This document shows, one piece after another, positions 10,475 through 48,895 of a DNA stretch of 64,000 bases (position 1 is the first letter of the stretch; every line of letters begins with the position of its first letter). Under the pieces are notes generated by a model, which saw nothing but the letters and a program-made list of their open reading frames with translations, ran no database searches and had not been told where the DNA came from. This stretch comes from Haliotis rubra (taxonomy: Eukaryota). The DNA is taken from contig NW_025766836.1 of NCBI RefSeq assembly GCF_003918875.1, forward strand, positions 744,001 through 808,000, read 5' to 3'. Position numbers and translations under genes: made by a program.

Positions 10475-10690
10475 CTTACCTGATTTGTGTGAAAAGTCCT
10501 ATGAAAATCGCGGGGATAACTGGCAAGTTGTGATATGGAAACTTTCTAAACGTTACTTTTGGTTACATATCATCCCATAACAACTGTACCACGCTATGAT
10601 TAGACATTCCATTGGTTAAATGCTGCAGTTTGACTGGTTGAGTCGAGTGTTTGCTGTAGGAGGTTTTAACTTCCCGGCATGCAAAACGCG
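10475..10690 (-). promoter_or_regulatory. DLC2 non-coding exon 1 donor and promoter module (X-box-like, CCAAT, SBS/ZNF143-like)
   Basis: Minus-strand donor CAG|GTAAGTG at 10479; ATCCCATAACAAC 10572-10584; ATTGG 10611; TTCCCGGCATGC 10671. Confidence 0.75.
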
Positions 10691-15461: not shown

Positions 15462-15731
15462 TCATCCTGATTTGAAGAGGAGAACGGCCACCTGTCCCAG
15501 ATAGAAGTAGACGAAGTGCTTGGTCTCGTGGGTGACGTAGCTGCCGAAGTTGCGGCCGACAATACAATGCCATGTGGGGTTGTACTTCTTGTCGAACTCT
15601 TTTTTAATGAATGCAGCAATGTCCTTCTCAATGTTGAACTTCTCCATAGCTTGAGTGGCGCATTCACAAGCGTCCTGCTGCATGTCCTCGCTCATGTCAG
15701 CGTTCTTGATGACGGCTTTTCTCTCAGACAT
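15462..15731 (-). CDS. DYNLL: Dynein light chain LC8 (DLC3)
   Basis: Intact 89-aa LC8 ORF; same acceptor context as DLC2. Confidence 0.97.
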
Positions 15732-16049
15732 GGTGTTCTGAAGAAGAAAAACGTTTTCCTGCGAATCAAAAATGTAACTTGCGAACGATTTGAAAACAGA
15801 GTGTGTGATTGGGTTTAGTTTTATGCCTCTTTAAGCAATATTCCAGCAATATGAAGGCGGGGGGACACCAGAAATGGGCTTCACACATTGTACCCACGTG
15901 GAGAATCGAACCCGGATCTTCGGCGTGACGAGCGCTCGCTTTAACCACTAGGCTTCTGCACGATATTTGGATTCTTCTTGTCGTTTTCCATGCGTAAAAT
16001 TGAGAAGGTACAATAACTTCTTTGCCTAGAATTAGTGAAGGCTAGGACG

Positions 16050-19000
16050 GCGGGCTGGTTGAGAACATGAATGGAAGGCGGACTGGTTGAGAACATGAAT
16101 GGAAGGCGGACTGGTTGAGAACATGAATGGAAGGCGGACTGGTTGAGAACATGAATGGAAGGCGGACTGGTTGAGAACATGAATGGAAGGCGGACTGGTT
16201 GAGAACATGAATGGAAGGCGGACTGGTTGAGAACATGAATGGAAGGCGGACTGGTTGGTAACATGAATGGAAGGCGGACTGGTTGGGAACATGGACGGAA
16301 GGCAGATTGGTTGAGAACATGGATGGAAGGCGGACTGGTTGAGAACATGAATGGAAGGCGGACTGGTTGAGAACATGAATGGAAGGCGGACTGGTTGAGA
16401 ACATGAATGGAAGGCGGACTGGTTGAGAACATGAATGGAAGGCGGACTGGTTGAGAACATGAATGGAAGGCGGACTGGTTGGTTGGAACATGAATGGAAG
16501 GCAGACTGGTTGAGAACATGAATGGAAGGCGGACTGGTTGAGAACATGAATGGAAGGCGGACTGGTTGAGAACATGAATGGAAGGCGGACTGGTTGAGAA
16601 CATGAATGGAAGGCGGACTGGTTGAGAACATGAATGGAAGGCGGACTGGTTGAGAACATGAATGGAAGGCGGACTGGTTGAGAACATGAATGGAAGGCGG
16701 ACTGGTTGAGAACATGAATGGAAGGCGGACTGGTTGAGAACATGAATGGAAGGCGGACTGGTTGAGAACATGAATGGAAGGCAGACTGGTTGAGAACATG
16801 AATGGAAGGCGGACTGGTTGAGAACATGAATGGAAGGCGGACTGGTTGAGAACATGAATGGAAGGCGGACTGGTTGAGAACATGAATGGAAGGCGGACTG
16901 GTTGAGAACATGAATGGAAGGCGGACTGGTTGAGAACATGAATGGAAGGCGGACTGGTTGAGAACATGAATGGAAGGCGGACTGGTTGAGAACATGAATG
17001 GAAGGCGGACTGGTTGAGAACATGAATGGAAGGCGGACTGGTTGAGAACATGAATGGAAGGCGGACTGGTTGAGAACATGAATGGAAGGCGGACTGGTTG
17101 AGAACATGAATGGAAGGCGGACTGGTTGGTAACATGAATGGAAGGCGGACTGGTTGAGAACATGAATGGAAGGCGGACTGGTTGGTAACATGAATGGAAG
17201 GCGGACTGGTTGAGAACATGAATGGAAGGCGGACTGGTTGGTAACATGAATGGAAGGCGGACTGGTTGAGAACATGGATGGAAGGCGGACTGGTTGAGAA
17301 CATGAATGGAAGGCGGACTGGTTGAGAACATGAATGGAAGGCGGACTGGTTGGTAACATGAATGGAAGGCGGACTGGTTGAGAACATGAATGGAAGGCGG
17401 ACTGGTTGGGAACATGAATGGAAGGCGGACTGGTTGAGAACATGAATGGAAGGCGGACTGGTTGAGAACATGAATGGAAGGCGGACTGGTTGAGAACATG
17501 AATGGATGGCGGACTGGTTGAGAACATGAATGGCAGGCGGACTGGTTGAGAACATGAATGGAAGGCGGACTGGTTGAGAACATGAATGGAAGGCGGACTG
17601 GTTGAGAACATGAATGGAAGGCGGACTGGTTGAGAACATGAATGGAAGGCGGACTGGTTGGTAACATGAATGGAAGGCGGACTGGTTGAGAACATGAATG
17701 GAAGGCGGACTGGTTGAGAACATGAATGGAAGGCAGACTGGTTGAGAACATGAATGGAAGGCGGACTGGTTGGGAACATGAATGGAAGGCAGACTGGTTG
17801 GTAACATGAATGGAAGGCGGATTGGTTGGGAACATGGAATGGAAGGCAGACTGGTTGGGAACATGAATGGAAGGCAGACTGGTTGAGAACATGGATGGAA
17901 GGCAGATTGGTTGGGAACATGGATGGAAGGCGGACTGGTTGGGAACATGGATGGAAGGCAGATTGGTTGAGAACATGAATGGAAGGCAGACTGGTTGAGA
18001 ACATGGATGGAAGGCAGACTGGTTGAGAACATGGATGGAAGGCGGACTGGTTGAGAACATGGATGGAAGGCATATGGATGGAAGGCAGATTGGTTGGGAA
18101 CATGGATGGAAGGCAGACTGGTTGGAGAACATGGATGGAAGGCAGATTGGTTGGAACATGAATGGAAGGCAGACTGGTTGAGAACATGGATGGAAGGCAG
18201 ACTGGTTGAGAACATGGATGGAAGGCGGACTGGTTGAGAACATGAATGGAAGGCAGGATTGGTTGGAGAACATGGATGGAAGGCAGATTGGTTGAGAACA
18301 TGGATGGAAGGCAGACTGGTTGGAACATGGAATGGAAGGCAGACTGGTTGAGAACATGAATGGAAGGCAGACTGGTTGAGAACATGGAATGGAAGGCAGA
18401 TTGGTTGAGAACATGAATGGAAGGCAGACTGGTTGGAACATGAATGGAAGGCAGATTGGTTGGGAACATGGATGGAAGGCGGACTGGTTGAGAACATGAA
18501 TGGAAGGCGGACTGGTTGAGAACATGAATGGAAGGCGGACTGGTTGAGAACATGAATGGAAGGCGGACTGGTTGGGAACATGAATGGAAGGCGGACTGGT
18601 TGAGAACATGAATGGAAGGCGGACTGGTTGAGAACATGAATGGAAGGCGGACTGGTTGAGAACATGAATGGAAGGCGGACTGGTTGAGAACATGAATGGA
18701 AGGCGGACTGGTTGAGAACATGAATGGAAGGCGGACTGGTTGAGAACATGAATGGAAGGCATGGAAGGCAGGTTGGTTGAGAACATGGATGGAAGGCGGA
18801 CTGGTTGAGAACATGAATGGAAGGCGGACTGGTTGGTAACATGGATGGAAAGCGGATTGGTTGGGAACATGGACGGAAGGCAGATTGGTTTGGGAACATG
18901 TTAGGTAGGCAGATTGGTTTGGGAACATGTTAGGTAGGCAGATTGGTTGGGAACATGGATGGAAGGCAGATTGGTGTGGGAACATGTTAGGTAGGCAGAT

Positions 19001-19650
19001 CGGTTGTGAACATGGATGGAAGGCAGATTGGTTTTGGAACATGTTAGGTAGGCAGATTGGTTGTGAACGTGCTTTGAAGGCAGATTGGTTTGAGAACATG
19101 GAAGGAAGGCAGATTGGATTGGAACGTGGACGGAAGGCAGATTGGATTGGAACATGAATAAAAGGCAGATTGGTTGGGAACAATGATGGAAGGCAGACTG
19201 GATTGGAACGTGGATGGAAGGCAGATTGGATTGGAACATGAATAAAATGCAGATTGGTTTGAGAACATGGAAGGAAGGCAGATTAGTTGGGAACGTGGAT
19301 GGAAGGCAGATTGGATTGGAACGTGGATGGAAGGCAGATTGGTTGGGGACGTGGATGGAAGGCAGATTGGATTGGAACGTTGATGGAAGGCAGATTGGTT
19401 GGGAACATGGATGGAAGGCAGATTGGTTAGGAACATGGATGGAAGGCAGAGCTTGATTGGGAACATGGATGGAAGGCAGATTGGTTGGGAACGTGGATGG
19501 AAGGAAGATTGGTTGGGAACGTGGATGGAAGGCAGATTGGTTGGGAACATGAATAAAAGGCAGATTGGTTCGGAACGTGCTTTGAAGGCAGATTGTATGC
19601 GAATTGTATGCGAATATGTATGGAAGGCAGATTGGATGAAAACATGGAAA
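16050..19650. repeat. 3.6-kb 28-bp minisatellite (GAACATGAATGGAAGGCGGACTGGTTGA)n in DLC3 intron
   Basis: Near-perfect units 16050-17800, more diverged toward 19650; same family as 8390-9003. Confidence 0.96.
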
Positions 19651-20840: not shown

Positions 20841-20978
20841 NNNNNNNNNNNNNNNNNNNNNNNNNNNNNNNNNNNNNNNNNNNNNNNNNNNNNNNNNNNN
20901 NNNNNNNNNNNNNNNNNNNNNNNNNNNNNNNNNNNNNNNNNNNNNNNNNNNNNNNNNNNNNNNNNNNNNNNNNNNNNN
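20841..20978. other. Assembly gap
   Basis: Run of N; CACTAGAAACACTC on both sides. Confidence 0.99.
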
Positions 20979-23489: not shown

Positions 23490-23715
23490 CTTACCTGACT
23501 TGTGTGAAAAATCCAATGAAAATCTCCGGATAACTGGCAAGTTGTGATATCGAAACCAAATTATTTCATTTCGATGTTAATTTTTGTTACATATCGTCCC
23601 ATAACAACTGTACCACGCTATGATTAGACATTCCATTGGTTAAATACTGCAGTTTGACTGGCTGAGTCGAGTGTTTACTGTAGGAGGTTTTAACTTCCCG
23701 GCATGCAAAACGCGC
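23490..23715 (-). promoter_or_regulatory. DLC3 exon 1 donor and promoter module
   Basis: Donor CAG|GTAAGTG at 23494; GTCCCATAACAAC 23596-23608; ATTGG 23635; TTCCCGGCATGC 23695. Confidence 0.75.
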
Positions 23716-24317: not shown

Positions 24318-24524
24318 NNNNNNNNNNNNNNNNNNNNNNNNNNNNNNNNNNNNNNNNNNNNNNNNNNNNNNNNNNNNNNNNNNNNNNNNNNNNNNNNNNN
24401 NNNNNNNNNNNNNNNNNNNNNNNNNNNNNNNNNNNNNNNNNNNNNNNNNNNNNNNNNNNNNNNNNNNNNNNNNNNNNNNNNNNNNNNNNNNNNNNNNNNN
24501 NNNNNNNNNNNNNNNNNNNNNNNN
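24318..24524. other. Assembly gap
   Basis: Run of N at the DLC3/DLC4 unit junction. Confidence 0.99.
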
Positions 24525-25347
24525 ATTCTGAAAGGGAGTCTGTGCTTCTTGCCGCACTCCAGCATCCACGCCTTGTAATGTAAGTAACCGAGCATGGACT
24601 AGACGATCCAGTGATATGTGTTGGGTCAACAGGGTGCAAGATCACCAAACGCATCTTTGACAATAAAAGTCGCCTCGGGCGTCAAACAAATATTGCTGGG
24701 ATGTTGCTGGGATTCATTCTAATCCGGAATCAAAGCAATGGACATATTTTATGAAAAGTTACTGGAACAGAATACACATTCATGCAAAGTTAGATTTAAA
24801 TTATTTATTTTCCCCAAAACTTAACAATAGGTAAAACTGAGATTGTAACATGAACGATAAACAACTTATTTCAATATTTTCTTTTGACATATCTTGTTAG
24901 GATTTGAAACGGGTTGACGTCTTGGTGTCAGCTAAATGGTGTTTGACCTGATTTTAAACAGAAGGTTTATTTACTTTAGAACGATACACATCAATACTTT
25001 ACAACAAAACGACAAACAAACTGATCATCTGTGAACATTCATAAAAGTCTGAGATCAAAGACGTATCAAGGGATCAGATAGGAAGATAAGACAAAGGTGC
25101 AAAATGTCATTTAAAAGGCACAAAGTATTATTTTCATTGGATGTGATATGGTCTGTAAAATTTTGCATTGTTCACTTATACAGAGAAAATAATATTTTGT
25201 ATTTCAATATTCCCAAGAATTTCAACAAAGGTATTTATTTGTGTGAAATATTTATGCATTATATCCTAGATGGGAGATATGGACTTGAGGACTTGGCAGC
25301 CGTAATGTTATCTATTGGTTTCATAATCCATCTTCATGGTTCATTGT

Positions 25348-25617
25348 TCAAACTGATTTGAAGAGGAGAACGGCCACCTGTCCCAGATAGAAATGGATGA
25401 AGTGCTTGGTCTCGTGGGTGACGTAGCTGCCAAAGTTGCGGCCGACAATACAATGCCATGTGGGGTTGTACTTCTTGTCGAACTCCTTCTTGATGTATGC
25501 AGCGATGTCCTTCTCAATGCTGTACTTCTCCAAAGCTTGAGTGGCGCTATCAATAGCGTCCTGCTGCATGTCCTCGCTCATGTCAGCCTTCGTGATGGCG
25601 GCTTTTCTCTCAGACAT
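25348..25617 (-). CDS. DYNLL: Dynein light chain LC8, divergent paralog (DLC4)
   Basis: Intact 89-aa ORF with V7A, K9T, N10K, N33S, Y75H, G89V relative to canonical LC8; acceptor TTCTTCTTCAG 6 nt upstream of ATG. Confidence 0.96.
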
Positions 25618-27597
25618 GGTCTCCTGAAGAAGAAAAACATTTTCTCCGAATCAAAATGCAGCTTGCGTCCAATTTGTAAACCGAGGAGTGGGTGAGTGAG
25701 TGAGTTTAGTTTTACGCCGCTTCCAGCAATATTCCAGCAACATCACGGCGGAGACACAAGAAATGTGTTTCACACATTGTACCCATTTGGGGAATCGACC
25801 CTGGCATGACGAGTGAACGCTTTAACCACTAAAGTACTGTCGGAAATACAAAAATACTTAGGTTTTTTAGCTGTTACTCTGTATCCCTAACATTCACACA
25901 ATTACAAATAGCCTATGTCGAAATAACCCACATCGACCTTACAGTCGATTTCAGCTTTAGTTTAAAGACTAAGCACACAGTTTTATTGAAATGTCCACAA
26001 ACATATTCGAGATCCCTGCCCCTTTTTTATGTTCCGTAACACATATGGTTCACTGGATGAACTACCTGTACGTCTCTCACTTTCAGATTAAGATTCTTCA
26101 GTGTTTTTACTGGTGAGATGCAATCAATTATAATCACACTATAATCGGTGATCAGTAAACACACCAAGACAGTCTAATTGCAGTTTCACAACTGAGCTTG
26201 ACGCTAAACCTCGCGGCAATATCCGTTTTCGATTGTCGTCTTTTGTGACAAGCAGAAAATGTTGAGGACCAAATCTAACCCGGAATCCACACGGGTGAAG
26301 TTATCAGGTACATGTATATGTTCGTGAGTGAGTGAGTTTAGCTTTAGCAATATTCCAGCAATATCGCGCCGGAGACACCAGAAATGGGCTTCACACATTG
26401 TACACATGTGGGAATCGAACCTGGGTCTTTGGCGTGATGAGAGAAGGCTTTAACCACTAGGCTAACCCACCGCCCTGCATGTATACGTTAAAGGATATTA
26501 TTCCCCCTTCAGATTCTTTTCATGGACGGTAATATCCATGTTAATTTTCCAGTTGAATATGGTACCACAGATCATAGTTCCACAGGTGTACTTCTGGAAT
26601 ATTTTCTCATAAACATTCTCATGAATGATCTTTCCTCCGTGAACTAGTTCACCCGGAAACATTAATCGTTAACATGTATTACCCCAGAAGGTTCCCTTAT
26701 TATGAGAGCCTATAACGAACCTTAGACATAAGTGGATATGGTTGTAAAGTGCACAATTTCCAACAAATTGTTATAATTCCTACAACTGGTTTCACATAAG
26801 GAAATCGTATGGAGCTACCGCTTTCGTGACAAGCGAACACTTTGACCAGGCAAGGATTTACAAATGATTGCCAGCAGAGTCCAATAAAATGAGCACTGGG
26901 ACCTGTGTTCGTTCGTTCGTTTGTTTGCACGCACGCATCAATAGGCAAGCTATATAGGACCGCCGTCTGTGAAGATTTCAGCCTAGACCAGACAATCTGT
27001 AATAAGTGATCTGGTTGACTTTACGTCATAACTGAATCACTGGCTTGCCTGGTTCATTCTACATTATTTATGGACTAACTCGATGAATCATGAATGTTAC
27101 TGAGGTTTACAAACCGTTCCTAACCACAGCGATATCCCGATACTGCGGACCAATTCTGTTTGTGAGTGCGTGAGTGCGTGAGTGTGTTAAGAGTTTAACT
27201 CACATCAGCAGTATTTCAGCTATATGGTGACTGATTCTATTTGTACCAGGCGACGCAGATCTATTACAGACAAGAACAAAACAATCATACAGAAAAGGAT
27301 CAATATAAACAGTCAGAGGTGCCTTTGTTTTCATATAAATATGTAAAGGCTTTTTCATTCAAACAAAATGAAAGTCATGGTTGAGACGAATACCAGTTCT
27401 GCAAAACTGTTTAGGTGTGTCTCCGCCATTACTATCCGGGTCAATATAGATACCGGTAGAGTCAGTTAGAAAACTAGATTAACCGATGATCAGTTTGGTT
27501 AGGCCACAAGTTGTTGTTCATTGTTCGTCAGATTGTTTAGTTCAAACTGAGTATTTTCGAATACGTGGCATATTCACCTACAATCTATCCATTTTGT

Positions 27598-27826
27598 ACA
27601 GTATATATGATGAAACTGTAGTCTGTCCAACTGTCCCTCGACAATATATATGATGACACTGTAGTCTGTCCAACTGTCCCTCGACAGTATATATGATGAC
27701 ACTGTAGTCTGTCCAACTGTCCCTCGACAGTATATATGATGACACTGTAGTCTGTCCAACTGTCCCTCGACAGTATATATGATGACACTGTAGTCTGTCC
27801 AACTGTCCCTCGACAGTATATATGAT
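27598..27826. repeat. 43-bp minisatellite (~5 copies) in DLC4 intron
   Basis: CAGTATATATGATGACACTGTAGTCTGTCCAACTGTCCCTCGA tandem; single shorter unit at the paralogous DLC5 site (~34261-34297). Confidence 0.93.
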
Positions 27827-28144
27827 GTTCCCTTCCGCCCAACCCTCTCTGGTATGCAAAATGAAACGAGTTTAGATTTGCCTACGGTTTTGAATCTCCC
27901 ATACCATTCGGGACCCTTTTCAGTTTAGATTGAGTCAGATCTATTTGTTTCTATCAAAATAACATATTTTCAGAGAATGAGCATTTAGACATCATTGGGG
28001 CAGACATGGACAGCAGGAAAACAGTGATAGGCGTGACGGTAAATATAATATAAGCTCGATAGAACTAGAAATCTTTATTACAACATTGATTCAGCATTTC
28101 AGCCTAAATGTGTTTATATAAGAAGGTGGGGACAGTTTAGTCCA

Positions 28145-28311
28145 CTTACCTGATTTGTATGGAAGTCCTATGGAAATCGCCAGACAAGTTGTGATATCGA
28201 AACCAAAGTATTTTATTTCGATGTTACCTTTGCTTACATATCGTCCTACAACAACTGCATCACGCTAATATCTGAAATTCCATTGGTTAAATACTGCAAT
28301 CTGAGTGGCTG
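28145..28311 (-). promoter_or_regulatory. DLC4 exon 1 donor and proximal promoter (degenerate X-box, CCAAT); SBS displaced to 30437
   Basis: Donor at 28149; GTCCTACAACAAC 28243-28255; ATTGG 28282. Confidence 0.68.
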
Positions 28312-30430
28312 CCATGCTTGGGGCGGATACAGGGACTGGGCAGATGTCCACCTTGGCAGAATTTCTTCAACCTAAACAATGGGACAATGAGAACGGTGGA
28401 TGCCCATCAGATGCCGTTATTTGAAAAATATCCCCGGTAGTTCTAGTCTAATGTATTCTAGCAATGTAAGCTTTGTTTATGCGTTTATGGTATGATAACT
28501 GATGCCATTTGATCCTATTTCTGTGTTTTGTTACCTTGACATGTGACTAGTTCATGTAACAATGTGATGTCTTTTGACCTATTACATTAAAAACCAAAGT
28601 TTGATTTATTTGAATCCCTAAATTAAATCAACCTAACTTTGCCATTGCTAGAAAAGTCTAAACAAATTGCTTAGATAAGTATACAGTTTTAACTTTAGAG
28701 CACATGCTGTATTTGTTATGCAGCAATGAAGTTCCGTTCATATGCTCAAAACAGCATCAAGGCAATTAAAATTGCAATACAATACAGCGATTACTACTCT
28801 CTTGCTGTAACCCATGTTTGGTGGTGTAAACCTACACCTGTTTATTTGTTTATTCACTTTATGGTCAGTTAATGAAATTATAACAGGTATAATTAGTAGT
28901 AACACCACTCAGATTTCCCGACAAAGGTCCCCATATGTCTGGAGTAAATACTCAACATTATAAATTAAGGTCTGGTGTGGCATATGTATTACGTGTTATG
29001 TAATATGCGCATGGATGTGCGGCAAGAGGAATTATCAAACAAAACCAAACAAACATCAATCAAAGGATTAACCGATAACATAACACGTTAATTGATTAAT
29101 AACTTCTATCTTGCACAAAGGATTTGTCAAAAGGTTGTGTACAGTGTATATATATCTAGATTTACTAACGTATACTGAATACACCCTGTCGTAAAGTGCC
29201 TGTGTAAAAACAACGCCCTTCCTTCAAAGGATTGTGGGGCGGTAGGGTAGCCTAGTGGTTAAAGCTTTGGCTCGTCACGCCGAAGACCCGGATTCGAATC
29301 CCCACATGGGCACAATGTGTGAAGCCCATTTCTGGTGTCCCCCGCCGTGATGTTTCTGAAATATTGCTAAAAGCGGCGTAAAACCAAAACTCAGTCAGTC
29401 CAAGGATTGACCGGCAATACGTTGATTGATTGCTCATTGTTGTATAACTAATTACTTTCAAAATAATGGTGGACATCATGCAAATAGTTGTCACATATGC
29501 GATCTTGGGTGACCAATGAGACTATACACCAATGTGAAAAACCTGAAACAGTCACGTGACCAGTAGAGAAATTATCACTAGTTATTACTTGTTTGAGTGG
29601 CAGTTAGAAGCTGTTTTCTAACGGCATTAGCATCTACACCGAAACGTCACATCGATTGCAATAAAGACGTTGTCTGTCCATAAAAACGTCCCTGTTTATC
29701 ACCAGTTATAACGATTTATACAACTTTAGCATATTTCACTGTTAAAAGACAGATGATATGGAACAGATTGGCACATCGTTCCTTTATGTGGATATTGATG
29801 GATACATTCCTCGATCAAGGTAAGGGCCTGATGTTATTGTTATAAATTTATTCGGTATTAATTTGAATATCTGCATTTTGTTTACATTCTTTTCTTGTAG
29901 CATCCCACAGAATCATTCTACTTCATTTCTTTGCGCCGTGAAGTTTAATGAGACAGACAACATACACAAGGTCGAACTTAGGATGCGTGTGTGAAATATG
30001 ATTCACGAAGGCAATTTATAAAATGTTTAGATATTTCAGTCATGTTATAAATTCACTAAACAGATCGTTCCAAAATCCATAAACATATATCAATAAATAT
30101 TTAGGATTATAAGACAAAGATGTGAAGCCGTACATTGACTTTGACATATTTTCCCACTGGCAGATGAAGTTAAACTTCAATTTGTTTTCATTTGTTATCA
30201 TAATAATGAAGATGGAAATATAAATGAATAAATGAAATTGCATCTTCTTTGTTGATCAAAGTCAGGATATACATATCATATACATATACTACCAATTGAA
30301 CTTACGGGTGGCGCATTTAGAGATAGCAACTCAGTCAAGAATTCTGGGATATCGTCCGGGTACTCACGGGGGATAAACAATAACAAAAGCAACAACCAGT
30401 CCCAGGGGAATTGCTCTGGATCAGTGTCCC
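28312..30430. other. ~2.1-kb insertion in the DLC4 promoter (second copy 34796-36760 in DLC5)
   Basis: Interrupts the CCAAT-SBS segment that is contiguous in DLC2/3/6. Confidence 0.8.
29235..29400 (+). mobile_element. SINE family A, DLC4-specific
   Basis: Flanked by CAAAGGATT / CAAGGATT; empty site CTTCAAAGGATTACCGG at ~35681 in the DLC5 copy. Confidence 0.85.
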
Positions 30431-31276
30431 TTTAAGTTCCCGGCATGCTAAACTAAACGGGCGCATCCCTAAACTCATTCATGACAACCAGCGAGCTCTA
30501 TGCAGGTAATAGACTACGACGAATAATTATGTGTATGATGCATGATATTCGACTTTAGCTGACGGGTTGTGTGTCACAGCACATATGTTGAACGCTTGAA
30601 TGATCCCGGCACTCAATTCAGAATAAGCTGTGCGGAGCTGAACTGTGTTACAATATAGGATGTGGTTGATATACACCGAAAGTGATATACCTCCTATATA
30701 ACCGTGACACGAGATTTGACTGACGCCGGCAGTGAGATAATAGTGAGTGAGTGAGGTTCGCACTCAGCAATATTCCAGCTATATGGCGACGGTCTGTAAA
30801 TAATCTAGTTCAATTCAATCCAATTCATTTTATTCTCAAAAAGAACCACCCACGGTGGTACAGGAGAAAAGTTTTCCAAAAATAACAAATATTTGTACTT
30901 TACATGATGGCGGTTATATTGTACTAGACAATCCAATGATCAAAGTAAGATAATAGTACGCCAGGTGTTTTGGTCATTAGCAATGCTTGTTTTCAGTCTA
31001 CTTATTTCTTTCTCGTTTGGGGCACAAACAGAATCACACACGCTTGTAAACGATGTGTTATATATTCTCGTAATGCTCCTGCCGTGATATTGCTGGAATG
31101 TTGCTGAAAGCGGCGTAAAACTAACTCACTCACTCTTTACGTGAACTGACAAGAATCCATTATTCGCTATGCTTTGAAATTGAACATGTTCACCACAATG
31201 AATAAGTGAATGGTTGTGTAACCGCCTTGAAATGCATTCCGCTTACACGGCGCCCCCTCTTAATGTTAGTATGGTA

Positions 31277-31441
31277 TGGGACGGTGGGGTAGCCTAGTGG
31301 TTAAAGCGTTGGCTCGTCACGCCGAAGACCCGGGTTCGAATCCCCACATGGGTACAATGTGTGAAGCCCATTTCTGATGTCCCCCGCCGTGATGTTGCTG
31401 GAATATTGCTAAAAGCGGCGTAAAACCTAACTGAGTCAGTC
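31277..31441 (+). mobile_element. SINE family A, full length
   Basis: TSD AGTATGGTAT. Confidence 0.82.
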
Positions 31442-32204
31442 AGTATGGTATAAAACCTCACTCACTCACACACTCACACACTCGCTCGCTCGCCCGACTT
31501 ACTCACTAACCATTAGGCTACCCCACCTCCCCTTAATCGAGCATGATCAAGACGATCCAGTAGTGTGTATTCGGTGAAAGGTCACCAAGCATTCAATGAA
31601 ACATTGCTTTGACAATAATAGTCAACAAATGTTGCTGGGATTTATTCGAATCCGGAATCAAAATATATCTTAATGGAACAGCATAGACATTTATGCAAAG
31701 TTGGCTTTAAATCATTTATTTTCCCCAAAACTCAACAACAGGTGAACCAGAAATTGTGATATAAAAGATAAACAACTCATTTGAATATTTTCTTTTGACA
31801 TATCTTGTTAGGATATGAAATGGGTTGACATGATTTTAAACAAAAGGTTTATTTACTTTAGAAAGATCAACAACAAAACGACGAACACAATAATCATTTG
31901 CAAACATTCATAAAAGTCTGAGATTAAAGACGTATCAAGGAATGACATAGGAAGAAATGACAAAGGTGCAAAATGTCATTTGAAAGGCACAAAATGATAT
32001 CTTCATTGGATGGTATATGGTCTGTAAGATTTTGCATTGTTCACTTATACAGACAATATAATATTTTGTATTTCAATATTCCCAAGAATTTCAAGGTATT
32101 TGTGTGAAATATTTATGCATTATATCCGAGATGGGAGATATAGACTTCAGCACTTGACAGTGGTAACTTTATCTAGTGTCTTCATAATCTTCATTGTTCA
32201 TTGC

Positions 32205-32474
32205 TCAAACTGATTTGAAGAGGAGAACGGCCACCTGTCCCAGATAGAAATGGATGAAGTGCTTGGTCTCGTGGGTGACGTAGCTGCCAAAGTTGCGGCC
32301 GACAATACAATGCCATGTGGGGTTGTACTTCTTGTCGAACTCCTTCTTGATGTATGCAGCGATGTCCTTCTCAATGCTGTACTTCTCCAAAGCTTGAGTG
32401 GCGCTATCAATAGCGTCCTGCTGCATGTCCTCGCTCATGTCAGCCTTCGTGATGACAGCTTTTCTGTCAGTCAT
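32205..32474 (-). CDS. DYNLL: Dynein light chain LC8, divergent paralog (DLC5)
   Basis: Intact 89-aa ORF, identical to DLC4 except residues 2, 3 and 7. Confidence 0.96.
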
Positions 32475-34642
32475 GGTCTCCTGAAGAACAAAAACAGTTT
32501 CTCCGAATCAAAATGCAGCTTGCGTCTAATTTGTAAACCGAGGAGTGGGTGAGTGAGTGAGTTTAGTTTTACGCCGCTTCCAGCAATATTCCAGCAACAT
32601 CACGGCGGAGACACAAGAAATGTGTTTCACACATTGTACCCATTTGGGGAATCGACCCTGGAATGACGAGTGAACGCTTTAACCACTAAAGTACTATCGG
32701 AAATACAAAAATACTTAGGTTTTTTAGCTGTTACTCTGTATCCCTAACATTCACACAATTACAAATAGCCTATGTCGAAATAACCCACATCGACCTTACA
32801 GTCGATTTCAGCTTTAGTTTAAAGACTAAGCACACAGTTTTATTGAAATGTCCACAAACATATTCGAGATCCCTGCCCCTTTTTTATGTTCCGTAAAACA
32901 TATGTTTCACTGGATGAACTACCTGTACGTCTCTCACTTTCAGATTAAGATTCTTCAGTGTTTTTACTGGTGAGATGCAATCAATTATAATCACACTATA
33001 ATCGGTGATCAGTAAACACACCAAGACAGTCTAATTGCAGTTTCACAACTGAGCTTGACGCTAAACCTCGCGGCAATATCCGTTTTCGATTGTCGTCTTT
33101 TGTGACAAGCAGAAAATGTTGAGGACCAAATCTAACCCGGAATCCACACGGGTGAAGTTATCAGGTACATGTATATGTTCGTGAGTGAGTGAGTTTAGTT
33201 TTAGCAATATTCCAGCAATATCGCGCCGGAGACACTCATAAACATTCTCATGAATGATCTTTCCTCCGTGAACTAGTTCACCCGGAAACATTAATCGTTA
33301 ACATGTATTACCCCAGAAGGTTCCCTTATTATGAGAGCCTATAACGAACCTTAGACATAAGTGGATATGGTTGTAAAGTGCACTTTGCACAATTTCCAAC
33401 AAATTGTTATAATTCCTACAACTGGTTTCACATAAGGAAATCGTATGGAGCTACCGCTTTCGTGACAAGCGAACACTTTGACCAGGCTTACCCCGCCCCT
33501 AAGGTAAGTGTGGAGTCGAAAGGCAAGGGTTTACAAATGATTGCCATCAGAGACCAATAAAATGAGCACTGGGACCTGTGTTCGTTCGTTCGTTTGTTTG
33601 CACGCACGCATCAATAATCAAGCTATATAGGACCGCCGTCTGTGAAGATTTCAGCCTAGACCAGACAATCTGTAATAAGTGATCTGGTCGACTTTACGTC
33701 ATAGCTGAATCACTGGCTTGCCTGGTCCATTCTACATTATTTATGGACTAACTCGATGAATCATGAATGTTACTGAGGTTTACAAACCGTTCCTAACCAC
33801 AGCGATATCCCGACACTGCGGACCAATTCTGTTTGTGAGTGCGTGAGTGAGTTAAGAGTTTAACTCACATCAGCAGTATTTCAGCTATATGGTGACTGAT
33901 TCTATTTGCACCAGGCGACGCAGATCTATTACAGACAAGAACAAAACAATCATCTAGAAAAGGATCAATATAAACAGTCAGAGGTGCCTTTGTTTTCATA
34001 TAAATATGTAAAGGCTTTTTCATTCAAACAAAATGAAAGTCATGGTTGAGACGAATCCCAGTTCTGCAAAACTGTTTAGGTGTGTCGCCGCCATTACTAT
34101 CCGGGTCAATATAGATACCGGTAGAGTCAGTTAGAAAACTAGATTAACCGATGATCAGTTTGGTTAGGCCACAAGTTGTTGTTCATTGTTCGTCAGATTG
34201 TTTAGTTCAAACAGTATTTTCGAATACGTGGCATTTTCACTAACATTCTATCCATTTTGTACAGTATATATGATGACACTGTAGTCTGTCCCTCGACTAT
34301 ATGATTTTCCCTTCCGCCCAAACCTCTCTCAATGCAAAAAGCCCTAATGAAACGATTTTAGATTTGCCTCCTGTTTTGAATCTCCTATATTATTCGGGAT
34401 CCTTTTCAGTTTAGATTGAGTCAGATCTATTTGTTTCTATCAAAATTTCATATTTTCAGCGAATGAGCATTTAGACATCATTGAGGCAGACATGGACAGA
34501 AGGACGCGACGCGGGACAACAGTGATAGGCGTGACGGTAAATAACAGAGATATAAGAGCGATAGAACTAGAAATCTATATTACAACATTGATAAAACATT
34601 TCAGTCTAAATGTGTTTATATAAGAATGGACAGTTTAGTCCA

Positions 34643-34795
34643 CTTACCTGATTTGTATGGAAGTCCTATGAAAATCGCCTGGCAAGTTGTGATATCGAAA
34701 CCAAATTATTTCATTTCGATGCTACCTTTGCTTACATATCTGTATCACGCTAATATCAGAAATTCATTGGTTAAATGCTGCAATTTGACTGGCTG
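34643..34795 (-). promoter_or_regulatory. DLC5 exon 1 donor and proximal promoter (X-box deleted, CCAAT retained); SBS displaced to 36765
   Basis: Donor at 34647; CTTACATATC|TGTATCACGC junction at 34740/34741; ATTGG 34766. Confidence 0.68.
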
Positions 34796-37700
34796 TCATG
34801 CTTGGGGCGGACACAGGGACTGGGCAGATGTCCACCTTGGCAGAATTTCTTCAACCTAAACAATGGGACAATGAGATCGGTGGATGCCCATCAGATGCCG
34901 TTATTTGAAAATATCCCCGGTAGTTCTAGTCTAATGTATTCTAGCAGAGTAAGCTTTTTTATGCGTTTATTGTATGATGACTGATGCGATTTGATCCTAT
35001 TTCTGTGTTTTGTTACCTTGACATGTGACTAGTTCATGTAACAATGTGATGTCTTTTGACCTATTACATTAAAAACCAACGTTTGATTTATTTGAATCCC
35101 TAAATTAAATCAACCTAACTTTGCCATTGCTAGAAAAGTCTAAACAAATTGCTTAGGTAAGTATACAGTTTTTAACTTTAGAGCACATGTTGTATTTCTT
35201 TTGCAACAATGAAGTTCCGTTCATATGCTCAAAACAGCATCAAGGCAATTAAAATTGCTATACAATACAGCGATTACTACTCTCTTGCTGTAACCCATGT
35301 TTGGTGGTATAAACCTACACCTGTTTATTTGTTTATTCACTTTATGGGCAGTTAATGTACTTATAACAGGTATAATTAGTAGTAACACCACTCAGATTTC
35401 CTGAAAAAATGTCTGGAGTAAATACTCAACATTATAAATTAAGGTCTGGTGTGGCAAATGTATTACGTGTTATGTAATATGCGCAAGGATGTGCAGCAAG
35501 AGGAATTATTCGCTGAGTTAAAAAACAAACATCGATCAAAGAATTAGCCGATAACACGTTGATTGATTCATTACTTTTATCCAACGGATTTATCAAAATG
35601 TAGTGTTTATGTGCGTAGATTTACTAACATATACTGAATACACGCTGTCGTAAAATGAGTCTGTAAAAACAACGCCCTTCCTTCAAAGGATTACCGGAAA
35701 ATACGTTGATTGATTGCTCATTGGTGTCTAACTAAATTACTTTCAAAAGAATGGTGGACATCATGCAAATAGTTGTCACATATGCGATCTTGGGTGACCA
35801 ATGAGACTATACACCAATGTGGAAATCCTGAAACAGTCACGTGACCAGTTGAGAAACTATCACTAGTTATTACTTCTTTGAGTGGCAGTAAGAAGCTGAT
35901 TTGCTAACGGCATTAGCATCAACAGCGAAACGTCACATCGATTGCAATAAAGACGTTGTCTGTCCATAAAAACACATTCCTGTTATAACGGTTCAAACAT
36001 GTTTTGCATATTTGACTGTTAAAAGGGACATGGAACATGTTTCTTTGTCAGCAGCAGATGAATGGCACATCGTTCTTTATGTGGATATTGATGGATACAT
36101 TCCTCGAACAAGGTAACGGCTTGATGTTATTGCTATAATTGTATTCGGTTTTAACTTGAATATCTTCATTTTCTTTATATTCTTTTCTTGTAGCATCCAA
36201 TAGAATCATTCCACTTCATTTCTTGCGCCGTGAAGTTTGATGAGACAGACAACAGACAACAAGGTCGCTCTTAGGGCGTGTGTGTGAAATATGATAAACG
36301 GAGGCAATTTATAAAATGTCTAGATATTTCAGTCATGTTATAAATTCACTAAACAGATCGTGTACATTTTATGAAGATCCAAAATGCATAAAAATATATG
36401 AATAAATTATTTAGGATTATATGACAAAAATCTGAAGACGTATATTGACTTCGGGGCTTTTTTTCAGTCCTAACATATTTTCCCACTGGCAGATGAAGTT
36501 TAACTTCAATTTGCTTTTCATTTTTTATCATAATAATGAGGATGGAAATATTAATGAGTAAAAGAGATTGCATCTTCTCTGTTGATCACTGTCAGGATAT
36601 ACATATCATATACATATACTACCAATTGAACTTACGGGTGGCGCATCAGAGATCGCAACCCAGTCAAGAATTCTGGGATACCATCCGGGTACTCGCGGGG
36701 GATAAACAATTATAAAAGCAACAACCAGTCCCAGGGAATTCCTCTGGATCAGTGTCCCTTTCCCTTCCCGGCATGCTAAACGGGCGCATCCCCAAACTCA
36801 TTCATGACAACCAACGAACTGTATGCAGACTAAGACGAATATTTAGGTGTATGGTGCATGAAATTTCGACTTTAGCTGACGGGTTGTGTGTCAAAGCACC
36901 TATGTTCAACGTTTGAATGATCCTGGAACTTCAGAATAAGCTGCGTGAAGCTGAACTATCTTATAATGTGGTTGATATACACCGAAAGTGATATACCTCC
37001 TATATAACCGTGACACGAGAGTTGCTGACCCCTTAAGATATCAGGTCGCCATGTGTTTCGGTCATTAGCAATGCTTGTTTTCAGTCTACTTATTTCTTTC
37101 TCGTTTAGAGTACAAACGGAATCACACACGCTTGTAAACCATGTGTTATATATCCTCGTCATGCTCCTACCTAACTGCCGTGATATTGCTGGAATATTGT
37201 TAAAAGCGGCGCAATACTAAACTCACTCAGTCCTAACGTGAACTGACAAGAATCCATTATTCGCTATGCTTTGAAATTGCGCAGATTCATCACAATAAAA
37301 AAGTGAATGGTTGTGTAACCGCTTTGAAATGTATTCGGGTTATACTCACTCACTCTCTCGCTCACTCGCTCCGCCGCCATATAGCTGGAAAATTGCTGAG
37401 TGCGGCGTACAACTAAACTCACTCACATTTGTTTTATAAATGGGTTTTGATACCATGCCTTACCGTGTCAAAGGAAACAAGAGTGTGATAGAAAGTTTCG
37501 TGTGATAAATTGGCTGTGTGGTGATTGCCTATCTTGATTCAACCACAGTGGGTCGTATTATTCTGTCGTGGCCGCGCACATTGAAACGCAAACGATGTAT
37601 TTATCAGATGCACGTGATATGCCACGTGACTGGCTGTTTCTTGCGTCAGTTTGTTTTTAGTTTTCATTTCACGTTGTTAGCTTGATGTTGGAAGACAGAC

Positions 37701-39509: not shown

Positions 39510-41602
39510 GGCATCTGATAATGTCAACCTGACAGAATATCAAAAAGAAGATGACTGATATAGCTTTGTTCATGAGAGAAGAAATACGAAACAGTTTTCA
39601 GGACAGTTTTAACAACATAGATAGACAAGAAGTTCCATCTGAAGCAGGAACAACACATTGCGTGAATGGGATAATTGTCCAGCCACCATCTGTGTCACGC
39701 ACACCTCCAAGACCTGCACCAGTCACTTTCAACAGAGAGAAAAGACGTAGTATTGAGCCCTCTAAAAGGTTCTACACTGTTGGAAAAAAGAAGTGGCCCC
39801 CTCCCTTGAAACCTGATCTCAATCTTTCTCAAACTCCCCATGACTCAACCTTCTCAGCACAACAACACAATCTGTTATGGATCCTCGCTATTCAAACATC
39901 GTTTGAGTTGCAGTTGTTTTGGGTCAAGTCCTATTTGCAAAGGCAACTGAGCTAGTACGGAGAGACAATAAACGCTTCAGAAATGTCGTGGTATTGGTAA
40001 TGATGGGCAACTTGCACACACTTAGCACTTTGATGTCAATTATTGGAAAGTTGCTGGACTTCACGACCTTGTTATAGAGTCAGGAATAGTTGCTGAAGGA
40101 TCGATCAAGAGTATAAGAAGGCAAGCACTACAACCGAGCTGTTCGTCTTCACAAACTTACTCATGAAGCAATGGTGAGATTGATTAGGCTGGAATTCGTG
40201 GAATGGCTTCAGCAAACACGCCCTGATGTTCAACAAACTGAACTTGTCCTTGCAAAACGAGGTGAGCTTCATCAATGTATAAGTCATGAAACCTAAAGAG
40301 AAATCCTTGAGAGAAGTTCCTGGATGGGATGGAAATCTGCACATTGTTCACAACCTATCTCAATGTTTTGCGCCATGAAAGGGGACACCTAGCAGCCATT
40401 TGGATGACCAATATCGATTTGGTGGAAATCTTGCTTGGGCTCATACATGTAGAAAAAGAAGGCAATTGGAACCTCACCTCGTTTGTATTCGTGACATGAT
40501 ACGTTGGTGCTTTTCCATGAACAAAACAAACTATGCAAGATGCCGTCCTGTTTACTATGCACAGAAACATCTCCAGAATTGGACAACCATGTCCATAACA
40601 GAGGTTTTTCAGTTCAGCTTAGCAAAAGAAATCCTTTTGGACGATTTGCTGTTGACCAAGCCACAGAGGAAACAGCCAACACAAACGGCCGGTGGAACTC
40701 GAGGCTTCAGCATGAAACCAGGAACTGTGTCTTGATACTATCTGACAGCAGAGCGCAGAGCCCTGTAGCAACTTCGTCATCTAGAGTCGTTCAAATCGCA
40801 AAGCACGTGCCATGCTGACCTGGAGAAAACACGAACACAGAAGGACGAATGTGATGTCCAAACACTTGTTGACATTCCCTGTAGTATTGGACCAATCTAT
40901 TTGTTGGAAATCACACAGAACTGGTTTGTATATCATCAAGGACTGCAGCTACATCTCAAGTATCATTGGATCTTTTGACTGCACACCAGAAAGGACTAGA
41001 TGCATACAACAAATTCAAGGAAAAACTAGGGGAGGGGGGAAGGCTTTCATAACACACTAAAGTAACTCAAATTGAAAACATTCACTGACATGAACAAGAA
41101 ATCACCAAAAGTTCCTGACAAACACATAGTGTGGAAGGCAGACAAAAGTTTATTTGGAAAGATGGTGCTCATTGCCCCAAACCGAAAATTGGACATGAGA
41201 AATGTCCTCTGTCATCCTCTGGGACCGTTGTCATGGTCACTGGCAAATAGTGATGGAACACTTAAAAAGACCAACAAAGCCATGCTAGCAAGCAAAGTGT
41301 CTTTAGCTGAAACCACCCCATAACAAAGTGCTGCACTCCTTGATGTCATGGCAATCCTCCTGAATCTTCATGGCGACTACCATACTTTTGATGTGCTCTC
41401 CAAGCATTCCAGACGTCACAGATGGACTTGACTGGGAGAAAGATACCAGTGGGAATCTACTGAAGCGGATGACAGGACCTCCAGCTCGAGAAATTGTTTT
41501 GGAACTCATTGGAATGTTCAAGAAAACTGTCGACCATCGGATTGTGTATGTCTCTTGAATGGTATGAAGTGTCCAGCAGCATGCAAGTTGGTAGACTGCT
41601 CC

Positions 41603-42402
41603 AACAATGATGATGATGACGACAACAATGATGATGATGACGACGACGATGATGATGATGACAACAATGATGATAATGACGACGATGATCATGATGATGA
41701 CAACAATGATGATGGAGGCGACGACAACAATGATGATGATGATGACAACAATGATGATGATGATGATGACAATGATGATGGTGACGACAACAATGATGAT
41801 GATGACGACAACAATGATGATGGTGACGACGACGATGATGATGACAACAATGATGATGTGACGACAACAATGATGATGATGACGACAACAATGATGATAA
41901 TGACGACAATGATGATAATGATGACAACACTGATGATGTTGACAACACTGATGATGATGACAACTCTGATGATGATGACGACAACAATGATGATGATGAT
42001 GACAACAATGATGATGGTGACGACAACAATGATGATGATGACGACAACAATGATGATGATGACAACTCTGATGATGATGACAACAATGATGATGGTGACG
42101 ACAACAATGATGATGATGACGACAACAATGATGATGATGACGACGACAATGATGATGACAACAATGATGATGATGACGAAAACAATGATGATGACGACGA
42201 CGATGATGATGATGATGACAACAATGATGATGGTGACGACAACAATGATGATGATGACGATGATGATCATGATGATGATGATGACAACAATGATGATGGT
42301 GACGACAACAATGATGATGATGACGACGACGATGATGATGATGACAACAATGATGATGGTGACGACAACAATGATGATGATGACGACGATGATCATGATG
42401 AT
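41603..42402. repeat. Compound (GAT/GAC/AAC) trinucleotide microsatellite
   Basis: ~800 bp of ATG/ACG/ACA triplets directly after the transposase Cys-rich domain. Confidence 0.95.
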
Positions 42403-42637
42403 AGTCAATAACCACCCATGGCAATCAGCGAAGAATCCTTAAAATTATTGTGTAAGGCTTATTACATTGTAAACCTCACGACTCATGAAGTAATTCAATA
42501 TCTACATATCAACATCTCTTTCAACGATACCACTTGTTGAGATTTTGTGAATATGTGGTATTTAGAGAAAGGTATTTCGTAGGAGTGAGTGAAGGAGTAT
42601 GCTTTACACCACTTATATAGCCGGGCGTGGAACACTA

Positions 42638-47253: not shown

Positions 47254-47523
47254 TTATCCTGATTTGAAGAGGAGAACGGCCACCTGTCCCAGATAGAAGT
47301 AGATGAAGTGCTTGGTCTCGTGGGTGACGTAGCTGCCAAAGTTGCGGCCGACAATACAATGCCATGTGGGGTTGTACTTCTTGTCGAACTCCTTCTTGAT
47401 GTATGCAGCGATGTCCTTCTCAATGTTGTATTTCTCAAGGGCTGCTGTGGAGCAGTCTACAGCGTCCTGCTGCATGTCCTCGCTCATGTCAGCGTTCTTG
47501 ATGACGGCTTTTCTCTCAGACAT
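47254..47523 (-). CDS. DYNLL: Dynein light chain LC8 (DLC6)
   Basis: Intact canonical-like 89-aa LC8; acceptor T-tract TAG ending 47528; AATAAA (minus strand) at 46763-46768. Confidence 0.97.
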
Positions 47524-48656: not shown

Positions 48657-48895
48657 CTTACGTTTTATGCTGTGTTGAAACTGGTTCCAATGTTAATCTC
48701 GAAGTGATTGCATTAATGTCACAACTTCAACTGCAGGTCAATATATACGCACCGGGGCAAATGTCAGGTAATAATCCCATGGCAACCACGCCACGCTATG
48801 AAAAGCAATTCTATTGGTTAATCGCCGTATGGTGACTGGCTGAGGCAGGTGTACTCTTTAGGGGGTTCTAACTTCCCGGCATGCCAAAAGCGCGC
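48657..48895 (-). promoter_or_regulatory. DLC6 exon 1 donor and promoter module
   Basis: Donor GTAAGTG at 48661; GTTGCCATGGGAT X-box (48774-48786); ATTGG 48813; TTCCCGGCATGC 48873. Confidence 0.78.

What the first reader, a model, noticed from the sequence alone, without database searches (positions are those of the whole stretch)
25348..36776. DLC4/DLC5: ligand-groove substitutions coincide with promoter disruption (candidate neofunctionalised LC8)
Seen: only DLC4/5 carry K9T, N10K, N33S, Y75H and G89V. The same two genes have a ~2-kb insertion moving the SBS from 60 bp to 2155 bp (DLC4) and 1999 bp (DLC5) from the CCAAT box, plus a decayed or deleted X-box. Both ORFs are intact. Known: K9 and Y75 line the LC8 TQT-peptide groove, and G89 adjoins the S88 dimer-regulating site. 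Inference: changed partner specificity together with a new expression domain, or alternatively early relaxed selection.
Basis: partly seen in the sequence, partly recalled or inferred. Interest (0 to 1): 0.75.

Follow-up and report, generated by a model that had tools for sequence, protein, structure and literature searches.

The report
Diverged LC8 gene pair, transposon-damaged promoter
Two neighbouring copies of the highly conserved dynein light chain LC8 carry changes at normally invariant residues and have a transposon in their promoter, a pattern that fits redundant copies drifting under weakened selection somewhat better than a new function.

Summary
These positions are invariant or nearly so in 136 other LC8s.

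The promoter lies 2.2-2.5 kb upstream of each ATG, across a 5'UTR intron. A TTAA-targeting non-autonomous DNA transposon sits between the SBS-like element and the CCAAT box. A conserved 14-bp block is deleted. The X-box-like motif is decayed in DLC4 and deleted in DLC5.

None of this favours neofunctionalisation over relaxed constraint:
- The DLC4/5 stem has 6 non-synonymous and 2 synonymous changes.
- Five of six replacements at conserved sites is what random placement gives (p=0.49).
- Groove enrichment is not significant (p=0.24).
- DLC4/DLC5 identity comes from a 2.3-kb gene-conversion tract that includes the intron, so it does not show purifying selection.
- Three RNA-like runs of the species hold DLC3 and DLC1-like transcripts but no DLC4/5-type contig.

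Intact ORFs, splice sites and poly(A) signals keep a functional, divergent paralogue alive as a rival.

My odds: relaxed constraint about 0.55, functional divergent LC8 about 0.33.

The parts
25348..25617 (-). DLC4 coding exon: 89 codons plus stop, LC8 with T9, K10, I22, S33, H75, V89 and A7
   Evidence: PF01221, 141 bits
32205..32474 (-). DLC5 coding exon: 89 codons plus stop, the same derived residues, differing from DLC4 at codons 2, 3 and 7
24804..25347 (-). DLC4 3'UTR down to the conserved AATAAA at 24809-24804
31715..32204 (-). DLC5 3'UTR down to the conserved AATAAA at 31720-31715
25624..28149 (-). DLC4 5'UTR intron. Donor CAG|GTAAGTG at 28149, acceptor ...TTCTTCAG at 25624. Contains tRNA-derived SINE copies at 25692-25831 and 26324-26475, and a 43-bp tandem repeat at 27598-27827
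   Evidence: inferred from conserved splice signals, no spliced read seen
32481..34647 (-). DLC5 5'UTR intron (donor at 34647, acceptor at 32481)
28150..28319 (-). DLC4 non-coding exon 1 and core promoter: CCAAT 28286-28282, TAGCGTG 28267-28260, decayed X-box-like motif 28255-28243
34648..34803 (-). DLC5 non-coding exon 1 and core promoter: CCAAT 34770-34766, TAGCGTG 34752-34745, X-box-like motif removed by a 13-bp deletion
28320..30432 (.). Non-autonomous TTAA-targeting DNA transposon in the DLC4 promoter. The SBS-side inverted-repeat end is intact next to TTAA (30433-30436). About 100 bp of the promoter-side end is deleted. Nested SINE at 29235-29400
   Evidence: (repeat-level DNA depth)
34804..36760 (.). 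The same transposon copy in the DLC5 promoter, without the nested SINE
30437..30448 (-). DLC4 displaced SBS-like core (GCATGCCGGGAA; reverse strand TTCCCGGCATGC)
36765..36776 (-). DLC5 displaced SBS-like core
25370..27626 (.). DLC4 side of a tract 98-100% identical to DLC5 32227-34289 (intron plus coding sequence), read as gene conversion. Flanks are 83-95% identical
23596..23706 (-). Reference intact promoter module of DLC3 (SBS, conserved GTTAAAACCTCCTA block, CCAAT, X-box-like motif). Equivalent modules: DLC2 10572-10682 and DLC6 48774-48884

Best explanation
DLC4 and DLC5 are one sub-lineage of a tandem array of LC8 dynein light chain genes (at least nine in the genome). Their shared ancestor suffered promoter damage.

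A roughly 2-kb non-autonomous, TTAA-targeting DNA transposon landed in the TTAA directly beside the conserved SBS-like element. A following deletion removed the transposon's promoter-side end together with about 25 bp of promoter, including a block conserved in all other LC8 promoters. The X-box-like motif then decayed.

With seven canonical LC8 genes still present, selection on this copy weakened. It picked up six amino-acid replacements, five of them at positions invariant in other LC8s.

The unit then duplicated; flank divergence is about 8-12%. Later a 2.3-kb tract covering the intron and coding sequence was homogenised by gene conversion.

The copies are still intact but are probably weakly expressed or silent, and on the way to decay.

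Shown here: the substitutions, the gene structure signals, the transposon, the deletions and the conversion tract. Inferred: reduced transcription, weakened selection, and the order of events.
For: - Site pattern: 6 of 9 replacements on the DLC4/5 lineage hit positions at least 98% conserved in 136 LC8s, against 1 of 22 in the six close sister paralogues (Fisher p=0.0007). So constraint differs on this lineage.
- That pattern equals random placement. Conserved positions number 65 of 89, and P(at least 5 of 6 at conserved sites) is 0.49.
- The stem has 6 non-synonymous and 2 synonymous changes, omega about 0.7.
- Promoter: a transposon with a 26-bp terminal inverted repeat and TTAA flanks, from a family with more than 2700 first-look candidates in the genome.
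- The block GTTNNAACCYCCTA is present at DLC2, DLC3 and DLC6 (and in alignment at DLC0 and C2757) but gone in DLC4/5.
- The X-box-like motif is decayed or deleted.
- Since conversion, DLC4 and DLC5 differ at 4 of 270 coding bases (3 non-synonymous, one at invariant V7). That is the same 1.5% as the intron.
- In RNA-like runs X1-X3 of the same species, every contig over codons 33 and 75 reads Asn and Tyr. The 3'UTR contig is DLC3 (20 of 21 diagnostic letters) and a coding contig is DLC1-like. Depth over DLC4 exon 1 and the unique intron is zero.
Against: - Both ORFs are intact. With an indel-to-substitution ratio of 0.07-0.15 in the neutral flanks, I estimate about 0.13-0.24 for the chance that 10-12 neutral changes leave 270 bp open. 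This is my own calculation, not a tool output.
- Splice donor, acceptor, Kozak context, CCAAT box and AATAAA are all kept in both copies.
- Complete neutrality since the split from DLC2/3 is rejected: 7 non-synonymous changes seen against about 16.6 expected, p=0.007.
- DLC3 has as many replacements as DLC4, so the replacement rate itself is not raised.
- Three replacements (K9T, N10K, Y75H) fall on ligand-contact residues.
- The RNA evidence comes from contigs of three small runs of unknown tissue. These show presence, not absence.
Confidence: 0.55

Rival explanations
1. DLC4/5 encode a functional, specialised LC8. The groove edge (T9, K10), the aromatic groove wall (H75), the start of helix 2 (S33) and the C-terminus next to S88 (V89) are re-tuned, changing which peptides are bound, or favouring heterodimers with canonical LC8. 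The transposon-rewired promoter, having lost its SBS-proximal and X-box-like inputs, gives a restricted expression domain such as germline or a larval stage.
For: - Both ORFs are intact, and the splice signals, CCAAT box and poly(A) signal are kept.
- Strict neutrality since the split from DLC2/3 is rejected.
- K9, N10 and Y75 are ligand-contact residues (PMC3789673, PMC11750543, PMC3078936).
- The Pfam score is barely reduced: 141 against 146 bits.
- Diverged LC8-like paralogues with dedicated roles are solved in ciliate axonemal dynein complexes (PDB list).
Against: - Groove enrichment is not significant: 3 of 6 against a 26/89 background, p=0.24.
- Stem N:S of 6:2 and the site placement are both as expected without selection.
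- DLC4/DLC5 coding identity is explained by conversion, not selection.
- Post-conversion differences are 3 non-synonymous to 1 synonymous.
- No DLC4/5-type contig appears in three RNA-like runs where the sister genes are present.
- None of the derived residues T9, K10, H75 or V89 appears in 136 other LC8s. So there is no precedent for this combination.
Confidence: 0.33
2. DLC4 and DLC5 are not two fixed genes. They are one locus represented twice, as divergent haplotypes laid in tandem by the assembler or as a copy-number polymorphism. In that case 'the same two genes' is a single evolutionary observation. This concerns how many genes there are and is compatible with either reading above.
For: - In DNA run X18 the His75-type depth is about 24-38, against about 15-29 for single-copy contigs.
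- The tract shared by DLC4 and DLC5 (27300-27699, depth 22-27) is no deeper than a DLC4-only stretch (26500-26699, depth 29).
- An assembly gap lies just beyond the DLC4 unit, at 24318-24524.
Against: - The two units are joined without a gap.
- They differ by 8-12% with many indels, a private SINE and a private tandem repeat. That is far above ordinary allelic divergence.
- Contig depths are a poor measure of copy number, as the tool itself states.
Confidence: 0.1

Closest known systems
Canonical LC8 / DYNLL1-DYNLL2 / Drosophila Cut-up (Pfam PF01221)
   Same: 89 residues and about 90% identity to solved DYNLL1/2 chains. Full-length PF01221 match. H55, F62, Y65, F73, Y77 and S88 are kept.
   Different: T9, K10, S33, H75 and V89 replace residues that are invariant or nearly so in 136 homologues. 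Y75 is one of the five aromatic residues lining the peptide groove (PMC3078936).
Diverged LC8-like paralogues of axonemal dyneins (for example the Tetrahymena LC8-like chains in 6zyw, 7k58 and 9y6s; Chlamydomonas flagellar LC8 in 7jtk)
   Same: They show that LC8 duplicates can diverge and take dedicated places in dynein complexes (entries listed). This is the natural model for the neofunctionalisation reading.
   Different: Judged by their much lower scores against DLC4 (79-95 bits against 160-175 for canonical chains), those paralogues are far more diverged, and they sit in solved complexes. DLC4/5 differ from their neighbours by six residues and have no detected transcript.
Young tandem duplicates whose promoter is disrupted by a transposon and which then degenerate
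   Same: TTAA-targeted transposon between conserved promoter elements, loss of conserved promoter blocks, near-neutral N:S, replacements at invariant sites, and redundancy with seven canonical copies.
   Different: No stop codon or frameshift has appeared yet, and the RNA processing signals are all intact.
ASCIZ/ATMIN-driven LC8 transcription with feedback by LC8 binding (PMC5963919)
   Same: LC8 genes in animals are known to depend on a dedicated promoter-bound zinc-finger factor. That makes conserved promoter blocks in this cluster plausible regulatory sites.
   Different: I did not establish the binding motif. The elements here were named by resemblance to Staf/ZNF143 and RFX sites. Which factor binds them is untested.

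Membership tests
LC8-type dynein light chain (PF01221) | Full-length match to the family profile above the curated cut-off | tested here: met
   DLC4 scores 141.2 bits (cut-off 29.1), residues 5-88 on profile positions 1-86. DLC6 scores 146.5 bits. E-values of 1e-51 to DYNLL2/DYNLL1 chains in the PDB.
LC8-type dynein light chain (PF01221) | Aromatic peptide groove F62, Y65, F73, Y75, Y77 (PMC3078936) | tested here: not met
   Four of the five are kept. Y75 is His in DLC4 and DLC5, whereas Y75 is present in 136 of 136 other homologues.
LC8-type dynein light chain (PF01221) | Dimer-interface residues H55 and S88 | tested here: met
   Both are present in DLC4/5. The following C-terminal residue is Val instead of the invariant Gly.
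LC8-type dynein light chain (PF01221) | Homodimer that binds TQT-type peptides | not testable with these tools
   This needs SEC/ITC or NMR. A structure predictor would not resolve the effect of single substitutions, so no job was sent.
RFX (X-box) regulated gene | Promoter-proximal palindromic X-box, GTNRCC N0-3 RGYAAC (consensus from my own knowledge) | tested here: inconclusive
   DLC6 has GTTGCCATGGGAT: a perfect left half and 3 of 6 on the right. DLC2 and DLC3 are weaker, DLC4 is decayed, DLC5 is deleted, and DLC0 and C2757 have none. The 10-mer is not over-represented in the window.
Staf/ZNF143 (SBS) promoter | Site resembling TTCCCAnnATGCAYYRCG close to the start site (consensus from my own knowledge) | tested here: inconclusive
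   Reverse-strand TTCCCGGCATGC is kept in DLC2-6, and C2757 has TCCCAGTATGCATTG. The exact core-to-CCAAT arrangement occurs only three times in the genome, all at LC8 genes. Factor binding is untested.
Processed (retro)pseudogene | Intronless copy without its own promoter, with a poly(A) tail and target-site duplication | tested here: not met
   All cluster genes share a 5'UTR intron, exon 1 and a promoter module, and they lie in tandem.
TTAA-targeting (piggyBac-like) non-autonomous DNA transposon (the insert) | Terminal inverted repeats flanked by a TTAA duplication, many dispersed copies, no coding capacity | tested here: met
   26-bp inverted ends and TTAA flanks in four other copies. More than 2700 first-look candidates in the genome. 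No ORF of 80 aa or more apart from one in the nested SINE. Superfamily assignment rests on the TTAA target alone.

The most novel reading that the evidence does not exclude
DLC4/5 are an expressed, lineage-specific LC8 variant. Their re-shaped peptide groove (T9/K10 edge, His75 wall) and Val89 C-terminus would give a new client set, pH-sensitive binding, or obligate heterodimers with canonical LC8. A promoter rewired by a transposon would confine them to a tissue not sampled here. That would be a rare natural experiment in re-tuning one of the most conserved hub proteins of eukaryotes.
Probability: 0.3. Interest if true: 0.55.

Novelty: new member of a known kind. Interest (0 to 1): 0.3.

Why it matters
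LC8 is among the most conserved eukaryotic hub proteins. Natural variants at K9, N10, Y75 and G89 were absent from the 136 homologues sampled here.

If the pair is functional, it offers ready-made groove variants for studying client specificity. If it is decaying, as I think more likely, it is a clean worked example of a duplicate being released from constraint. A dated transposon hit at a TTAA inside a conserved promoter module is followed by loss of conserved elements and then replacements at invariant sites. Gene conversion makes two decaying copies look like independent witnesses.

Either way, the conserved SBS-like, CCAAT and X-box-like module of the intact copies is a usable candidate for LC8 promoter studies in this animal.

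Tried and rejected
- Purifying selection inferred from DLC4/DLC5 coding identity: rejected. The 98-100% identity runs through the whole intron.
- Ancestral-state reconstruction with iqtree2: the machine declines ancestral sequences. I did not try it another way. I counted shared derived states against the seven other paralogues instead.
- Orthologues in other species. The word-index protein search returns only 90% cluster representatives, and none above 92% identity to DLC4 appeared. The exact-sequence look-up shows each of the six proteins on one contig only. The look-up of encoding contigs had no record. Conservation across species could therefore not be tested.
- Expression. No listed run is on record as RNA. 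X1-X3 behave like RNA, with zero depth in unique intron, but they are contigs, so absence is weak evidence.
- A retrogene origin for the single coding exon: rejected because of the shared 5'UTR intron and promoter.
- The 2-kb difference as a deletion in DLC2/3/6 rather than an insertion in DLC4/5: rejected because of the inverted-repeat end, the TTAA site and thousands of dispersed copies.
- Groove-specific clustering of the replacements: not significant.
- One paper search returned nothing useful on K9.
- No complex or structure prediction was run. It would not separate the hypotheses.
Full report
**What is in the window.**
The window is G000:C1946:744001-808000 of a 1.38-Gb, 2855-contig animal genome. 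The nearest named LC8 proteins are molluscan, from Mytilus and several gastropods.

It holds six 89-codon LC8 genes:

| Gene | Coordinates | Strand |
|---|---|---|
| DLC1 | 2138-2407 | + |
| DLC2 | 7793-8062 | - |
| DLC3 | 15462-15731 | - |
| DLC4 | 25348-25617 | - |
| DLC5 | 32205-32474 | - |
| DLC6 | 47254-47523 | - |

A six-frame search of the whole genome adds three more: DLC0 7.2 kb before the window, one gene on C2757 and a more diverged one on C314. All six window proteins are already present as predicted proteins in public databases.

**The coding observation holds.**
Only DLC4 and DLC5 have T9, K10, S33, H75 and V89. They also share I22, and DLC4 alone has A7.
- K9, Y75 and G89 are invariant.
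- N10 is present in 135 of 136.
- N33 is present in 134 of 136.

Y75 is one of five aromatic residues lining the groove (PMC3078936). K9 and N10 are listed among ligand-contact residues in solved complexes (PMC3789673, PMC11750543). A phosphomimetic at S88 dissociates the dimer (PMC12017986).

**Gene structure.**
Each gene has a polypyrimidine tract and AG acceptor 4-6 bases before the ATG. A block ending in CAG|GTAAGTG lies 1.1-7.8 kb upstream. So the coding exon is exon 2, and the promoter lies beyond a 5'UTR intron of 2526 bp in DLC4 and 2167 bp in DLC5. A conserved AATAAA about 540 bp after the stop is kept in all copies. No spliced read was seen, so this structure is inferred from conserved signals.

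**The promoter module.**
In DLC2, DLC3 and DLC6 the order of elements is:
1. an SBS-like core (reverse strand TTCCCGGCATGC)
2. the block GTTNNAACCYCCTA
3. CAGCCAGTCA
4. AACCAAT
5. TAGCGTGG
6. an X-box-like motif
7. about 100 bp of sequence, then the splice donor

The exact core-to-CCAAT arrangement occurs three times in the whole genome, all at these genes. DLC0 and C2757 keep the SBS-like site, the AACCTCCTA block and two CCAAT boxes but have no X-box-like motif. The names of these motifs rest on resemblance only.

**What happened in DLC4/5.**
About 2.1 kb (DLC4) and 1.97 kb (DLC5) now separate the SBS-like core from the CCAAT box. The insert is a dispersed repeat. Genome searches give more than 2700 first-look candidates, with collinear copies at 74-80% identity. 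DNA contig depth over it is hundreds to thousands of times the single-copy level.

Alignment with four other copies defines 26-bp terminal inverted repeats flanked by TTAA. In DLC4 the SBS-side end is intact and abuts TTAA and then the SBS-like core. The empty site in DLC2 and DLC3 reads GGGAAG-TTAA-AACCTCC.

The promoter-side end of the element, about 100 bp, is missing. So is about 25 bp of promoter carrying the conserved block. A SINE nested at 29235-29400 exists only in DLC4. The X-box-like motif has two further changes in DLC4 and is cut out by a 13-bp deletion in DLC5.

The promoter damage is therefore real.

**Selection tests.**
*Stem branch.* The coding tree groups DLC4 with DLC5 (support 99) and places them weakly (support 64) beside DLC2 and DLC3. 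Eight nucleotide states are shared by DLC4 and DLC5 and absent from all seven other paralogues. They amount to six replacements and two synonymous changes, for omega near 0.7. This is marginally unlikely under the cluster's background omega of about 0.17 (p=0.06) and ordinary under neutrality.

*Site pattern.* The lineage has 6 of 9 replacements at positions at least 98% conserved. The six close sister paralogues have 1 of 22 (Fisher p=0.0007). Constraint has clearly changed. But 65 of 89 positions are conserved, so five of six hits at such positions is what random placement gives (p=0.49). Three of six on the 26-residue contact list is not significant (p=0.24).

*Rate.* Complete neutrality since the split from DLC2/3 is rejected: 7 replacements against about 16.6 expected, p=0.007. 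DLC3 has as many replacements as DLC4. The data fit a period of constraint followed by relaxation. They equally fit a shifted constraint.

**The two copies are not independent.**
The DLC4 and DLC5 units (24701-31268 and 31629-37345) are 83-95% identical in the 3'UTR and upstream region. They are 98-100% identical from 27626 to 25370, which covers the intron and coding exon. That is a conversion tract. Coding identity therefore says nothing about selection, and the shared substitutions count once. Inside the tract the coding sequence differs at 4 of 270 bases, 3 of them replacements, all within codons 2-7. That matches the intron's 1.6%.

**Expression.**
No run is recorded as RNA. Runs X1-X3 of the same species behave as RNA, with zero depth in the unique intron bins that the DNA run X18 covers. 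In X1-X3:
- Every contig over codon 75 reads TAC (Tyr) and every contig over codon 33 reads Asn.
- The 3'UTR contig matches DLC3 at 20 of 21 diagnostic letters.
- One coding contig is DLC1-like.
- No DLC4/5-type contig and nothing over DLC4 exon 1 was laid.

Contigs show presence, not absence, and the tissues are unknown. This is weak evidence against strong expression.

**Evidence for function.**
Both ORFs are open. The indel-to-substitution ratio in the neutral flanks is 0.07-0.15. From that I estimate about 0.13-0.24 for the chance that 10-12 neutral changes leave the frame open. This is my own arithmetic. Splice sites, Kozak context, CCAAT and the poly(A) signal are all kept. This holds the functional reading at about one third.

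**A caveat on copy number.**
In DNA run X18 the His75-type depth (about 24-38) and the depth of the shared tract are close to single-copy level. Divergent haplotypes laid in tandem, or a copy-number polymorphism, are not excluded. Against this, the 8-12% flank divergence and private insertions point to two real copies.

**Verdict.**
The most likely story is a redundant LC8 copy released from constraint after a transposon broke its promoter, then duplicated and homogenised by conversion. It is a tidy but ordinary case of duplicate-gene evolution. The functional-variant reading remains testable and would be moderately interesting.

The first stage also noted the six-gene cluster and the X-box loss on this same window. 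I re-checked both here.

Noticed in passing
window 1-986, 8396-9001, 16045-19595: Large minisatellites sit inside the 5'UTR introns or upstream regions of DLC1, DLC2 and DLC3. The unit is 28 bp, with a 46-bp unit at the window start, and the array is 3.5 kb in DLC3. They create long spurious ORFs. DLC4/5 lack this array.
   Followed up: partly
window 25692-25831, 26324-26475, 29235-29400, 31277-31442, 32549-32688 and about 12 other sites: A roughly 150-bp tRNA-derived SINE with an ACTC-repeat tail is very abundant. One copy lies about 70 bp upstream of the acceptor in DLC2-5. RNA-like runs contain many contigs of it.
   Followed up: partly
G000:C1946:736754-737017 (7.2 kb before the window), G000:C2757:338991-339254, G000:C314:148742-149005: Three more single-coding-exon LC8 genes, so the family has at least nine members. 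The first-stage 'six-member cluster' is really seven in tandem.
   Followed up: yes
window 52083-53219 (-) and 55260-55529 (-): A 378-aa open frame with a full glutamine synthetase catalytic domain (PF00120, 245 bits). A possible upstream exon 2 kb away had no Pfam match. This looks like a GS-like gene next to the LC8 array.
   Followed up: partly
window 4082-5977 (+) and 11171-12163 (-): Broken ORFs that look, by eye, like a reverse-transcriptase (LINE-like) element and a Tc1/mariner-like transposase, lying between the LC8 genes. No family scan was run on them.
   Followed up: no
window 41303-42442: A roughly 1.1-kb low-complexity tract that reads as His/Cys-, Ser- or Asp/Asn-rich frames on both strands.
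   Followed up: no
window 25393-25395 and 26500-27699, DNA run X18: His75-type contig depth and the depth of the tract shared by DLC4 and DLC5 are near single-copy level. This hints at a copy-number polymorphism or tandemly placed haplotypes.
   Followed up: no
window 28235-28228, 34740-34733, 23588-23581, 10564-10557 (approximate): A minimal ATG-TAA upstream ORF (GATATGTAA) just after the X-box-like motif is conserved in DLC2-5 but not in DLC6. It may lie in the 5'UTR.
   Followed up: no
window 20841-20978 and 24318-24524: Two runs of N, left untouched. The second lies just beyond the 3' end of the DLC4 unit.
   Followed up: no
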